Below, one piece after another: positions 51,171 through 54,291 of a stretch of 64,000 nt of DNA. A program made the position numbers and the translations under genes. Where the stretch lies: assembly GCF_006345805.1 (NCBI RefSeq), contig NC_043010.1, forward strand, positions 58,714,001 through 58,778,000, read 5' to 3'. Each line of letters opens with the position of its first letter. The stretch's first letter is position 1. Source of the DNA: Octopus sinensis. Its lineage: Eukaryota. Under the pieces are notes generated by a model. The model saw only the letters and a program-made list of their open reading frames with translations, did no database searches and was not told the origin of the DNA.

Positions 51171-53912
51171 AAGTGGTTTGTCAGGCCTGCTAAAAACAGC
51201 AGCTAAATTTGATTCAATTCACAGCCAACCTCCTTAACAAAGATGTCTGAAACTCTCTTTGGATAAAAAAAAAACCCTCCATACATGATGTTTGAATGGA
51301 AAATGTAATGGTCATGGCTGGAATAATATTGACCATAGATCTACTCAATAGGGGTCAGCCTGGGGCTACACAAAACCAACCACTGCACATTTCAGTAACA
51401 ATTACACCACCACCGTCACCACATTACGCATATCTTCATGAAATGCTCTCCATAGAGTTGAGACATTTTCATAACAAAACCAAGGTTATTCTTGGTTTCT
51501 TTTCTCTTCAATTAGACATCTTAATTACCTGAACACACCCTTGCACCTCCCCACCCCATACCTCAACTCAACCTCCTCCTCCGCCCCAATCATGTTTGTA
51601 AGAGATGGAGCAGTAGTGGGAGTGTGTTGATGTCACATCTTCCCCAACCAACTCCACCCCCACCTCTACAGTCATTTTTTTTTTTAGTTTAGTAATTGGC
51701 AAACAGAAGTCTTATGTATGTATATCTGTGGGTGTATATATATATATCTATATCTCTCTCTCTATCTATATATATATCATCATCATCATTTAATGTCAGC
51801 TTTCTATGCTGGCATGGGTTAGATGATGGTTTAACTAGAACTGATAAGCTTTGTGAACTGCACCAGGTTCCATATATATATATATATATATGTTGAAACC
51901 AATTGCAGACCTGTTGAGGCAAGTGAAATCAAAATCAATTCGATGACTGGCATCCGTGCTTGCAGGGTGCAAAGAGCACCATACGAGTGTGATCGTTGAC
52001 AGAGTGGCTATTCGAGTATGATCGTTACCAGCGTTGCCTTACTGGCACTTATGGACAGATGAAGAAAATATAAGTGTTCTAGTGTAGGACAGAGGAGGAA
52101 TCAAGGTGATTGAAAGTATAACGAAGGAATAAGGGAAGGTGGCAGGTATTTTGATTAACTGGAACCAAACTAAGCAGTGGAGAGGAGAACCAAGTTTGAC
52201 TTGGCCCTTGGACTGACCAAGTTCACAGGTAGAGGCCTCACTTGCTAGACTTACGATCTGATTCAGATATTTGAGGTCTTGTTCAGGGCAGACCGCCAGG
52301 TAGAGAGGAAATGAGGTGAGGTTATGGGTAGGGTGGTCAATCTCAACCAGAAATGAGGTGAGAGGAAGAAGCCACCCTGAAATAGTCAGACAAGGGTGGT
52401 TAACACATACATTGACTTTGGTATATATTATGTCCTCACCATTGTGCTTCACTCCATGTTGGATCTGGCCCCTTTGGAGTGTCTCTTTTATTTATTTCTT
52501 GTGTCTCCCAGCATTTTATCTCCTGCCAACATCAGCTTTAATAGAACTGCAGTTTTGAGTCAAATGGAATCTAAGACTGGGGATGTAGCACATGGAATAC
52601 TTTCAGGCACTCGTAGTTCTCTGTCTGTAGGGCAGAATGGTCAATGAAATGTCCACATTAGGATTCTATACAGGATTAAAGACAATGTACGAGCAATGAC
52701 ATATTTCAGAAAACTCTGAGAATCAACAAATAGTTTCCAGGAATCACAAAACTAACAGTGCCACCAGAAGTGGGGGGTGGGGGACATGATCAGTTCTTGG
52801 TAAGATATATAACACTAGAAATATCATCAGACTGATATGCAGTGAGGACAATGAGATGATATTTATTCTTCACACAGCCCTCCACTTCTGACCAAGAACT
52901 TATCAACTTCAAACTTCACTTGAAACAGGTGGTAAGAATAGAGAGACACACATAGAGAAAGAGACAGAGATATAGAGAAAGGATGCAGCCATCTAGAAAA
53001 TTTAAAGAAAGATTGTTGTTATTGCTATTGTTGTTGTTTAACCCTGTGTCAGTTTTAAATTGAGCAAACTTGTGATCAATGGCATCCCATCCATGACCAT
53101 TCCATTTTTTTCCTCTGTGGAAAAATGAAATTAATCCCGTGTAGGTCTCCAATGACAAGTTTCCCAATGAAATACAGTATTAACAAAATGAAAAAAAAAA
53201 TTAAATAGAAGTAAATATAATTACTGGGGTGGGTGTGGAGGGAATTATTAATGTCATTTCATTCCTACTCTTAATGAAGACTAAGAAAAAGAAGAAGGAA
53301 AATATGATAAGTCTATTACTAACACCTTTCACCTTTTCTGTCTATTGTTTCTATCGTTTTCCTTTGCTGTGTTAAATAAGAGCCCTCTGCTCAAAATATT
53401 TGTGTTTATTACTGTAACATATTCTATAAAATATATATTCTATCAAATATAAGAATACATTATACACTTACATGAAATGTAGGCACACACACACACAATT
53501 CATTTATAAAATATAGGTACACATTTAAGGTATCTGTAACATTTTAGCATACAAAGAATATATTTATAAAATATAAGCAGATACACTGTATGTCTGGATA
53601 ATATAAAGATAGATGCAGGCATGGCTGTGTGGCAAGAAGCTTGCTTACCAACAACATGGTTCCGGGTTCAGTCCCACTGTGTGACACCTTAGGCAAGTGT
53701 CTTCTACTATAGCCTCAGGCCAACCAAAGCCTTGTGAGTGGATTTGGTAGACAGAAACTGAAAGAAGCCTGTCGTATATATATACATATATATATATGTA
53801 TATATATATATTAATAATAATAATATGACAAGAGAATGAATGAGACCTTGATATTATGTAAAATAGAGGAATTTCTCTATAAATATAATATGTGACAACT
53901 AGTTGCTTTTCA

Positions 53913-53975
53913 TTATAAAACTCAGAGTTTCGGATGCCAGGGCTGAAGTCTGCTCTGGCATCTCATCAGTTATTA
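53913..53975 (-). ncRNA. Minimal type I hammerhead ribozyme with canonical core
   Basis: taataa-CUGAUGA-GAUGCCAG...CUGGCAUC(C)-GAAA-C-UCUGA-GUU-ttataa. Stem II has 8 bp with one bulge; stem I has 4 bp, a mismatch, then 1 bp; GUU cleavage triplet at 53921-53919. Confidence 0.75.
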
Positions 53976-54156
53976 AGACAAACAAAAACGCTATAAAAAA
54001 TACCATTGAATAAAGGGAAATTACTCCAATAGGCATGGGGAAAGTAAAACTTCATTCATAGAATCTGCATATGCACACATGTACACATATGCACACACAC
54101 AAACACGTGTGTGTGTGTGTATATATATACACACATAGCATTTTTGTTGTTTGTCT

Positions 54157-54219
54157 TAATAACTGATGAGATGCCGGAGCAGACTTCAGCTCCCCCATCC
54201 AAAACTCTGAGTTTTATTA
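54157..54219 (+). ncRNA. Degenerate inverted copy of the 53913-53975 hammerhead (G12 to A)
   Basis: CUGAUGA at 54163-54169 and a 6-bp stem I (taataa/ttatta), but AAAA replaces GAAA at 54201 and the outer stem II is disrupted. Confidence 0.65.
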
Positions 54220-54240
54220 TGACAAACAACTAATTGTCAC

Positions 54241-54291
<51 letters not shown>

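What the first reader, a model, noticed from the sequence alone, without database searches (positions are those of the whole stretch)
53884..54249. Sense-strand hammerhead in the protocadherin intron, preceded by its own antisense arm
Seen: two ~110-bp inverted arms nested in a SINE's (TA)n. The arm that is sense to the Pcdh pre-mRNA has an intact core (53913-53975, about 680 nt after the donor), while the opposite-strand copy is mutated (G12 to A). In the nascent RNA the antisense arm is made first and could sequester the ribozyme in a long duplex. Inference: splicing speed, duplex formation or ADAR editing could set whether the pre-mRNA is cut, tuning expression or favouring the short read-through form. 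Caveat: minimal HHRs often cleave poorly as monomers, and this may be neutral TE debris.
Basis: partly seen in the sequence, partly recalled or inferred. Interest (0 to 1): 0.85.

Follow-up and report, generated by a model that had tools for sequence, protein, structure and literature searches.

The report
Decaying retroelement hammerhead pair in intron
The hammerhead ribozyme motif in this octopus protocadherin intron is real, but it is one half of an old, decaying inverted pair left by a Penelope-type retroelement insertion, a known and common kind of genomic debris, and nothing indicates that it regulates the gene.

Summary
The window is Octopus sinensis. A ~365-bp element (53885-54248) sits in the internal (TA)n of a SINE, inside the 6.1-kb intron of a minus-strand protocadherin gene. 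It has two ~110-nt inverted arms, 87.5% identical. The gene-sense arm carries intact hammerhead core boxes (53975->53913, cut site 53919/53918). The other arm has G12->A and a broken helix II.

The regulatory reading is not supported.
- The motif is a minimal type I hammerhead of the kind described for Penelope-like elements: long helix II, short A-U helix I, tiny near-palindromic helix III. Single copies of that kind show no detectable cleavage in vitro.
- Outward-facing inverted pairs are a standard form for such insertions. I found a second, unrelated octopus family twice in the same form. Any transcript through such a pair reads the antisense arm first and a sense hammerhead second.
- The arms differ from each other about as much as neutral intron sequence differs between species.
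- O. bimaculoides deleted the sense arm and keeps the same splice sites and the same 819-residue protein length.
- The RNA is predicted to fold into one long hairpin (-210 kcal/mol) that buries the ribozyme.

Verdict: a new member of a known kind, of low interest.

The parts
54655..57087 (-). Large first coding exon of a protocadherin gene (Octopus sinensis; 811 of the 819 codons). The donor GTAAG begins at 54654.
   Evidence: ORF and translation. 100% match to an annotated 819-aa protocadherin. Gene range and C-terminus.
48539..54654 (-). Intron of about 6.1 kb that contains the finding. In O. bimaculoides the whole gene spans only 2,995 bp, which leaves an intron of roughly 0.5 kb.
   Evidence: Gene ranges of 8.57 kb (O. 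sinensis/vulgaris) against 2.99 kb (O. bimaculoides). Splice sites read.
48512..48538 (-). Last coding exon segment, LPTRTLKR plus stop, after acceptor TTTTCCAG.
53618..53774 (+). 5' part (tRNA-like head and body) of SINE-1, antisense to the gene.
   Evidence: Alignment with two other copies of the SINE family.
53775..53811 (.). Left remnant of the SINE's internal (TA)n, which was the insertion target.
53812..53884 (.). Unique sequence of about 73 nt between the (TA)n and the left arm. It belongs neither to the SINE nor to the repeat and may be the one-sided 'tail' typical of Penelope-type insertions.
   Evidence: No significant similarity to the element. Absent from other SINE copies. A tail is described in PMC8557442 and seen in the L006/L009 family.
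53885..53994 (-). Left arm: the inverted, 5'-truncated copy, whose 3' end points outward. It is sense to the Pcdh pre-mRNA.
53913..53975 (-). Minimal type I hammerhead motif with intact core boxes. Helix I uses 53970-53975 and 53913-53918. CUGAUGA is 53969-53963. Helix II is 53962-53955 with 53940-53933. The extra C is at 53932. GAAA is 53931-53928. Helix III is 53928-53920. U17 is at 53919, and the predicted cut lies between 53919 and 53918.
   Evidence: Descriptor hit, chance estimate, folding.
53995..54134 (.). Centre between the arms: about 75 nt of unique sequence plus a (CA)n/(TG)n/(TA)n palindromic microsatellite. The microsatellite length differs between O. sinensis and O. vulgaris.
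   Evidence: The weak miRNA-family hits here are microsatellite artefacts.
54135..54248 (+). Right arm: a copy with its 3' end pointing outward into (TA)n. Its outer 46 nt are the only part kept in O. bimaculoides.
54157..54219 (+). Decayed hammerhead copy. G12->A at 54201 (CpG to CpA) and two C-C mismatches in helix II. Helix I still has 6 bp.
54249..54299 (.). Right remnant of the SINE's internal (TA)n/(TATG)n.
54300..54495 (+). 3' part of SINE-1.
48591..49020 (+). SINE-2, a second copy of the same SINE with an uninterrupted (TA)n, next to the acceptor. It serves as the 'empty-site' comparator and is the far breakpoint region of the O. bimaculoides deletion.

Best explanation
This is the relic of one insertion of a non-autonomous, hammerhead-bearing retroelement of the Penelope-like (PLE) type.

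Origin (inferred from the anatomy and from published PLE behaviour). The element integrated into the (TA)n microsatellite inside a SINE. As is typical for this machinery, it integrated as two 5'-truncated copies joined head to head, with 3' ends and hammerheads facing outward, plus extra sequence at one end. This happened at about the time O. sinensis/vulgaris and O. bimaculoides split, or shortly before.

Original role of the hammerhead (established knowledge for the class, not shown here). It belongs to the element's own life cycle and processes element transcripts, probably as dimers.

History since insertion (shown). Both copies have drifted at the neutral rate. One lost G12 and helix II. 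The other, which happens to be gene-sense, kept the core boxes but weakened helix I. O. bimaculoides deleted most of the structure.

Behaviour in the Pcdh pre-mRNA (predicted, not measured). The two arms pair into an imperfect hairpin with a ~110-bp stem that buries the ribozyme. The most likely outcome is that it is spliced out and degraded with the intron, perhaps after A-to-I editing like any intronic inverted repeat, with no effect on the gene.
For: - Motif class. Helix II is 8 bp, helix I is 4-6 A-U pairs, and helix III is tiny and near-palindromic (ACUC-U-GAGU). This matches the PLE 'min-HHR' description, which includes 'dual min-HHRs ~100-700 bp apart on opposite strands' (PMC4209133).
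- Insertion form. PLE insertions are 5'-truncated, often carry an adjacent inverted 5'-truncated copy, have a 30-40-bp tail at one end and favour microsatellites, (TA)n included (PMC8557442). Here the insertion splits the SINE's (TA)n, and other SINE copies show the empty site.
- Independent local precedent. A second hammerhead family in O. sinensis Pcdh loci (L006 70461-70956 and L009 6577-7439) occurs both times as an outward-facing inverted pair with an 11-bp target duplication and a shared ~33-nt tail.
- PLEs are present. O. vulgaris has 30 Penelope families with recently active copies (PMC13282606), and a decayed PLE-like reverse transcriptase lies in L006.
- Neutral decay. The arms are 87.5% identical, against 86-92% between species in the same intron. 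Most differences are CpG transitions, and the ribozyme part is not better conserved.
- Not required. The sense arm is deleted in O. bimaculoides. The polarity is clear because the SINE there lacks head positions ~52-165. The splice sites and the C-terminal 40 residues are identical, and the product is 819 residues in both species.
- Sequestration. The whole element folds at -210 kcal/mol, z = -25. In isolation the ribozyme fold scores -14.8 against a minimum of -19.4 kcal/mol.
Against: - No other copy of this particular family was found in about 370 kb of O. sinensis sequence. There is therefore no family consensus, no full-length element and no direct link to a PLE reverse transcriptase.
- The unpaired nucleotide next to helix II is on the 3' side (between 11.1 and G12). 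The published min-HHR consensus has it between A9 and G10.1.
- The one-sided extra sequence is ~73 nt, not 30-40.
- Target duplications cannot be read in (TA)n, so a DNA-transposon (MITE) origin is not formally excluded.
- Helix II of the sense copy shows one pair changed on both sides (G-C to A-U, relative to the CCGG inferred as ancestral). This could hint at constraint, although both changes are CpG transitions.
- No RNA data were available.
Confidence: 0.8

Rival explanations
1. One reading: a working ribozyme switch. The sense hammerhead cuts the Pcdh pre-mRNA unless the upstream antisense arm, ADAR editing or fast splicing prevents it, and this tunes expression of this protocadherin.
For: Core boxes are intact on the sense strand only. 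The antisense arm is upstream and pairs with it. One helix II pair is changed on both sides in the sense copy. In the three inverted pairs seen in Pcdh loci, the gene-sense copy is the less damaged one, but with n=3 this gives p=0.125.
Against: The layout is automatic for outward-facing pairs. This class is inactive as a monomer in vitro (PMC4209133), and there is no second sense copy to dimerise with. Helix I is weakened and the active fold is disfavoured. Divergence is at the neutral level. The arm is deleted in O. bimaculoides with no change to the splice sites or protein length. At about 6% change per arm, a copy keeps about 15 essential positions with probability near 0.4 by chance (my calculation).
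Confidence: 0.03
2. A miniature inverted-repeat DNA transposon (MITE) whose ~110-bp terminal inverted repeats derive from a hammerhead-containing sequence. It would have been inserted by a transposase at a TA site.
For: Long terminal inverted repeats, small size (365 bp), no coding capacity and TA-rich flanks compatible with a TA duplication.
Against: Hammerheads in animal genomes are tied to retroelements (PMC4209133, PMC7229834). The extra 73 nt on one side only does not fit a clean cut-and-paste insertion. The second octopus family with the same layout has a tRNA-like (SINE-type) head, 11-bp duplications and a tail, so it is a retroelement. No further copies with the same fixed ends were found.
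Confidence: 0.1
3. A single 5'-truncated copy was inserted, and the palindrome arose later by fold-back repair or local inverted duplication unrelated to the insertion mechanism.
For: The non-palindromic 140-nt centre and the microsatellite in it could mark a repair junction.
Against: The same head-to-head form recurs in two independent insertions of another family, each with intact target duplications around the whole pair. That points to formation at insertion. It is also the published PLE pattern.
Confidence: 0.05
4. The hammerhead-like motif is a chance match in AT-rich repeat DNA.
For: Rfam gives no hammerhead hit.
Against: Expected 0.013 hits per window, and none with helix II >= 7 bp in 300 simulations. 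The second arm carries the same motif, differing mostly by CpG decay. Rfam also misses a textbook min-HHR.
Confidence: 0.01

Closest known systems
Minimal hammerheads (min-HHRs) of Penelope-like elements (Cervera & de la Pena 2014, PMC4209133)
   Same: Type I topology, helix II of 7-8 bp, helix I of 4-6 bp, very short near-palindromic helix III suited to dimer formation, an unpaired nucleotide beside helix II, mostly solo or truncated genomic copies, and pairs on opposite strands 100-700 bp apart.
   Different: The unpaired nucleotide is on the 3' side of helix II rather than between A9 and G10.1. No PLE open reading frame or pseudo-LTR is attached. Cephalopod examples were not described in the papers I could read.
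Insertion architecture of Penelope-like elements (Craig et al. 2021, PMC8557442)
   Same: 5' truncation, an adjacent inverted 5'-truncated copy giving inverted repeats, extra sequence at one end only, and insertion into a (TA)n microsatellite.
   Different: Here both copies are very short (~110 nt) and non-coding. The one-sided extra sequence is ~73 nt rather than 30-40. The clades reported to prefer (TA)n (Naiads) lack canonical hammerheads.
Schistosoma Sm-alpha/Sj-alpha SINE-like retroposons with a hammerhead, and animal non-LTR retrozymes (PMC7229834, PMC6765202)
   Same: Short non-autonomous retroelements that carry a type I hammerhead. The second octopus family I found (L006/L009) has a tRNA-like head and resembles these closely.
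   Different: Retrozymes are direct tandem repeats that give circular RNAs. This is an inverted pair, so a transcript carries only one sense ribozyme.
Conserved intronic hammerheads of amniotes (HH9/HH10) and the discontinuous Clec2 3'UTR hammerhead (cited in PMC7229834 and PMC6765202; details from my own knowledge)
   Same: A hammerhead on the sense strand of a pre-mRNA, within an intron.
   Different: Those are deeply conserved across species, have stable helices and cleave efficiently as monomers. This one is lineage-restricted, decaying, minimal, and deleted in a congener.

Membership tests
Hammerhead ribozyme, type I | Core boxes C3-U4-G5-A6-N7-G8-A9 and G12-A13-A14, the A15.1-U16.1 pair, and H17 not G | tested here: met
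   Met on the minus strand at 53969-53963, 53931-53929, 53928/53920 and U17 at 53919. Not met in the plus-strand copy, which has G12->A at 54201.
Hammerhead ribozyme, type I | G10.1-C11.1 closing helix II directly on the core | tested here: inconclusive
   An 8-bp helix II starts with G-C, but one extra C (53932) lies between C11.1 and G12. Both arms share it. Its effect on activity is unknown.
Hammerhead ribozyme, type I | Three helices able to form around the core | tested here: inconclusive
   Helix II is strong. Helix I is 4 A-U pairs plus a mismatch. Helix III is 3 bp. The constrained ribozyme fold scores -14.8 against a minimum of -19.4 kcal/mol.
Hammerhead ribozyme, type I | Match to the Rfam hammerhead covariance models | tested here: not met
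   No hit at gathering score or at E<=10. The control min-HHR in L006 is also missed, so the test is insensitive for this subclass.
Hammerhead ribozyme, type I | Site-specific self-cleavage | not testable with these tools
   Needs in vitro transcription or RNA-end mapping.
PLE-type minimal hammerhead (min-HHR) | Long helix II (7-8 bp), short helix I (4-5 bp), minimal palindromic helix III | tested here: met
   8 bp, 4-6 bp, and ACUC-U-GAGU, compared with PMC4209133.
PLE-type minimal hammerhead (min-HHR) | Conserved extra nucleotide between A9 and G10.1 | tested here: not met
   Absent. The extra nucleotide is on the other strand of the junction. The L006/L009 family does have it: CUGAUGA-A-GGCUG.
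PLE-type minimal hammerhead (min-HHR) | Belongs to a multi-copy family with covarying helices in the same genome | tested here: inconclusive
   No other copy in about 370 kb of O. sinensis sequence. The whole genome could not be searched.
PLE-type minimal hammerhead (min-HHR) | Located in the pseudo-LTR of an element that encodes RT and GIY-YIG endonuclease | tested here: not met
   No reverse transcriptase or endonuclease reading frame in the intron. Published data say most genomic copies are such orphans.
PLE-type insertion | Inverted 5'-truncated copy adjacent to the main copy, one-sided tail, microsatellite target | tested here: met
   Head-to-head arms, 73 nt of unique sequence on one side, and a split (TA)n. 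The tail length is atypical.
Conserved regulatory intronic hammerhead (HH9/HH10-like) | Conservation of the motif at the orthologous site across species | tested here: not met
   Deleted in O. bimaculoides. Identical in O. vulgaris, but that genome is 98.9% identical overall, so this says nothing. The Argonauta intron cannot be aligned.
MITE (DNA transposon) | Terminal inverted repeats flanked by a target-site duplication, with many copies sharing the same ends | tested here: inconclusive
   Inverted repeats are present. A duplication cannot be read in (TA)n, there is extra sequence on one side, and no other copies were found.
Non-LTR retrozyme | Direct tandem repeats, each with a hammerhead | tested here: not met
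   The two copies are inverted, not tandem.

The most novel reading that the evidence does not exclude
The gene-sense copy may keep weak self-cleaving activity that the upstream antisense arm gates. More generally, sense-strand hammerheads of outward-facing retroelement pairs in octopus protocadherin introns may be preferentially preserved. In the three pairs seen here, the gene-sense copy is always the less damaged one, and the sense copy in the window shows one helix II pair changed on both sides. That would make these insertions a lineage-specific brake on individual protocadherin transcripts.
Probability: 0.03. Interest if true: 0.6.

Novelty: new member of a known kind. Interest (0 to 1): 0.14.

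Why it matters
As it stands this is ordinary: one more decayed retroelement hammerhead, in a group (cephalopods) where I found no description of them in the papers I could read.

Two small points are useful for annotators. First, octopus genomes carry Penelope-type minimal hammerheads that Rfam models do not detect. Second, these elements insert as outward-facing inverted pairs, so every intronic insertion produces the pattern 'a sense ribozyme preceded by its own antisense'. That pattern should not be read as design.

If a genome-wide survey showed that sense copies in neuronal gene introns are preferentially preserved, the topic would become interesting.

Tried and rejected
- Rfam at gathering score on the whole window and at E<=10 on 53800-54300 gave no hammerhead family, only microsatellite-driven miRNA noise. 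A control showed Rfam is blind to min-HHRs, so I did not use this as evidence against the motif.
- A search for more copies of the arm found none in the window, none in O. bimaculoides or Argonauta loci other than the 46-nt orthologous remnant of the right arm in O. bimaculoides, and none in five further O. sinensis Pcdh loci totalling 308 kb.
- An exact-pattern scan of metagenome contigs gave one 22-nt hit in a GC-rich bacterial contig (L005), a chance match that I discarded.
- Argonauta hians as an outgroup for the intron: the gene structure is conserved but the intron cannot be aligned, so it does not help.
- I asked whether the 73-nt extra sequence derives from the element; its similarity is no better than that of shuffled sequence.
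- Coding capacity: there is no reverse transcriptase or endonuclease ORF in the intron. The window holds only LINE fragments.
- The supplementary PLE consensus sequences of PMC8557442 are not held, and Lunse et al. 2016 is not held.
- I ran no further search on finding an autonomous octopus PLE partner. The classification does not depend on it, and the chance of hitting the right family among about 30 was low.
- I considered whether the O. bimaculoides deletion is an assembly artefact. The arm/SINE-head junction shares only 2 nt, so repeat collapse cannot have produced it, and there is no N gap there. Only the size of the deletion (0.55 or 5.6 kb) could be affected.
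Full report
**Source and gene context.** The window is 100% identical over 14 kb to Octopus sinensis chromosome CM016872.1. The O. vulgaris locus is 98.9% identical. An 814-codon ORF on the minus strand (57087-54643) is the large exon of a protocadherin. The annotated 819-residue product ends ...PPSVLL|LPTRTLKR. The exon therefore ends at 54655, followed by GTAAG, and the last eight codons lie at 48538-48512 behind TTTTCCAG. 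The finding lies inside this 6.1-kb intron.

Two arms, 53885-53994 and 54135-54248, are inverted copies that are 87.5% identical with one 3-nt indel.
- The minus strand reads UAAUAA-CUGAUGA-GAUGCCAG-(14 nt)-CUGGCAUC-C-GAAA-CUCUGAGU-U|UUAUAA.
- Both core boxes, the A15.1-U16.1 pair and U17 are in place. The cut would fall between 53919 and 53918.
- The plus-strand copy has CCAAAAC in place of CCGAAAC (G12 to A at 54201) and two C-C mismatches in helix II.
- 'Intact' needs three qualifications. There is an extra C between C11.1 and G12, shared by both arms. Helix I is four A-U pairs and a mismatch, where the other arm has six pairs. Helix III has three pairs.

**The motif is not a chance match.** A structure descriptor finds only this site on both strands of the window. 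It finds 0.013 sites per simulated window, and none with helix II of 7 bp or more in 300 simulations. Rfam reports no hammerhead. It also misses a textbook minimal hammerhead elsewhere in the octopus genome, so that negative result carries little weight.

**The element is nested in a SINE.**
- A tRNA-like SINE on the plus strand runs 53618-53774, then (TA)n, then 54300-54495.
- Two other copies of the same SINE (48591-49020 in the window, and one in L009) have an uninterrupted internal (TA)n at that point.
- About 440 bp were therefore inserted into the microsatellite: 73 nt of unrelated sequence (53812-53884), the left arm, a 140-nt centre and the right arm.
- Both arms have their 3' ends, and their hammerheads, facing outward.

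**What kind of thing it is.** The literature describes exactly this.
- Penelope-like elements carry 'minimal' type I hammerheads with a long helix II (7-8 bp), a short helix I (4-5 bp) and a very small palindromic helix III.
- Thousands of mostly orphan copies occur per animal genome, including 'dual min-HHRs ~100-700 bp apart on opposite strands' (PMC4209133).
- Penelope-type insertions are 5'-truncated, often have an inverted 5'-truncated copy next to them, carry a 30-40-bp 'tail' at one end and prefer microsatellites such as (TA)n (PMC8557442).
- Penelope-like elements are a sizeable and partly young fraction of the O. vulgaris genome (PMC13282606).

**A local precedent.** I fetched five further O. 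sinensis protocadherin loci, 308 kb in all. None holds a copy of this family. They do hold a second, unrelated hammerhead family (L006 70461-70956 and L009 6577-7439).
- It has a tRNA-like head and a textbook minimal hammerhead, CUGAUGA-A-GGCUG...CAGCC-GAAA-CG-UU.
- Both times it is a head-to-head inverted pair facing outward.
- Each pair is bracketed by an 11-bp target duplication, and both share a ~33-nt tail at one end.
- A decayed PLE-like reverse transcriptase also lies in L006.

The architecture in the window is therefore the usual insertion form of hammerhead retroelements in this genome. Because the pair faces outward, any transcript that crosses it, in either direction, contains the antisense of one arm first and a sense hammerhead second.

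**Age and selection.**
- The right arm predates the split from O. bimaculoides, whose ortholog keeps its outer 46 nt, including the G12-to-A variant.
- In O. bimaculoides the rest is gone: the remainder of that arm, the centre, the sense arm, the 73-nt piece and SINE head positions ~52-165. The junction GGATG|AACC shares only 2 nt.
- A SINE inserts as a whole, so this is a deletion in O. bimaculoides, not an insertion in O. sinensis.
- The deletion is at least 0.55 kb and apparently 5.6 kb. The larger figure could be inflated by collapse of two SINE heads in that assembly, but the junction itself cannot be an assembly artefact.
- O. bimaculoides still has the same donor, the same acceptor and an 819-residue product that falls in the same 90%-identity cluster and has an identical C-terminal 40 residues.
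- The two arms differ by 12.5%. Intron sequence differs by 8-14% between the two species, so the arms have drifted at the neutral rate.
- There are 7 differences in the 63-nt ribozyme part. The other ~54 nt have 4 substitutions and one 3-nt indel.
- Several differences are CpG transitions. Among them are G12 to A in one arm and both changes of a helix II pair in the other, which turn an inferred G-C pair into A-U. That double change is the only hint of constraint, and CpG decay explains it equally well.
- At about 6% change per arm, a copy keeps about 15 essential positions by chance with probability near 0.4 (my calculation). An intact core in one of two copies is unremarkable.
- O. vulgaris is identical in both arms, but it is too close a relative to be informative. 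The Argonauta intron cannot be aligned.

**Would it cut?**
- For this class, single motifs gave no detectable cleavage and dimers gave low cleavage in vitro (PMC4209133; summarised in PMC6765202).
- Only one sense copy is present here.
- In isolation the ribozyme fold is 4.6 kcal/mol worse than the best fold, in which GAAA and the cleavage site pair with each other.
- In context the two arms form a single hairpin of -210 kcal/mol, z = -25.
- The likeliest behaviour is an inert intronic hairpin, possibly edited like other long double-stranded RNAs in octopus neurons. That last point is inference; I had no RNA data.

**Rivals.**
- A MITE cannot be excluded formally, because target duplications cannot be read in (TA)n. 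The one-sided extra sequence, the retroelement association of animal hammerheads and the local precedent all argue against it.
- A later fold-back duplication is made unlikely by the precedent pairs, each of which sits inside a single target duplication.
- Chance is excluded.
- The regulatory switch remains possible only as a low-probability reading. Its one new hint is that in all three pairs seen, the gene-sense copy is the less damaged one (n=3, p=0.125, and one pair lies outside the queried gene).

**Verdict.** The structural interpretation is right and the functional one is unsupported. This is a new member of a known kind, a Penelope-type minimal hammerhead pair in a cephalopod, and its interest is low.

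Noticed in passing
L006 70461-70956 and L009 6577-7439 (O. sinensis CM016872.1, Pcdh cluster): A second hammerhead-bearing short retroelement family with a tRNA-like head and a textbook PLE-type minimal hammerhead. It is present twice, each time as an outward-facing inverted pair with an 11-bp target duplication (TCAATTCAGTT; GAAACCATGTT) and the same ~33-nt tail on one side. The L009 pair is split by a later SINE insertion.
   Followed up: partly
window 53913-53975 (-); L006 70860-70915 (+); L009 7380-7440 (+): In all three inverted pairs, the copy on the protocadherin-sense strand is the less damaged hammerhead. With n=3 (p=0.125), and with one pair upstream of the queried gene, this is only a hint worth a genome-wide count.
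   Followed up: no
L002 12816-12880 (O. bimaculoides) vs window 48640-54210: The orthologous intron of O. bimaculoides has a deletion of 0.55 to 5.6 kb, running from inside the right arm to a SINE head, with 2-nt microhomology at the junction. The remaining SINE head looks chimeric between the two O. sinensis SINE copies. This suggests either a second unequal-recombination event or assembly collapse.
   Followed up: partly
window 53420-53600 and 54500-54640: Minisatellite-like units (tatatttataaaatata..caNaca) lie on both sides of the SINE, starting right after the splice donor. The SINE inserted into this array.
   Followed up: no
window 48591-49020: A second copy of the same SINE ends about 50 nt upstream of the intron's acceptor site, so the 3' splice region is flanked directly by repeat DNA.
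   Followed up: no
window 54062-54130: A palindromic (CA)n/(TG)n/(TA)n microsatellite in the centre of the element gives weak sub-threshold Rfam hits to several miRNA families (mir-3149, mir-297 and others). These are artefacts. The array length differs between O. sinensis and O. vulgaris.
   Followed up: yes
window 32244-33647 (+) and 15876-16583 (+); L006 83538-86714 (+): LINE fragments: an AP-endonuclease domain, and a reverse transcriptase followed by a PHD-like finger. They are unrelated to the finding.
   Followed up: partly
L006 ~88500-91450 (-): A decayed open reading frame with N-terminal and RT motifs that I recognise as typical of Penelope-like elements (..INLSKK..LARGLKF.., ..LVSFDVVNLYTNIP..), interrupted by a microsatellite. 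Pfam gives no hit on the N-terminal piece. No similarity to either hammerhead family was found nearby.
   Followed up: partly
L005 1063-1084 (metagenome contig Ga0206352_10854603): A 22-nt exact match to the CUGAUGAG...GCAGAC stretch in a GC-rich bacterial contig. It is a coincidence of a very large database, not a relative.
   Followed up: yes
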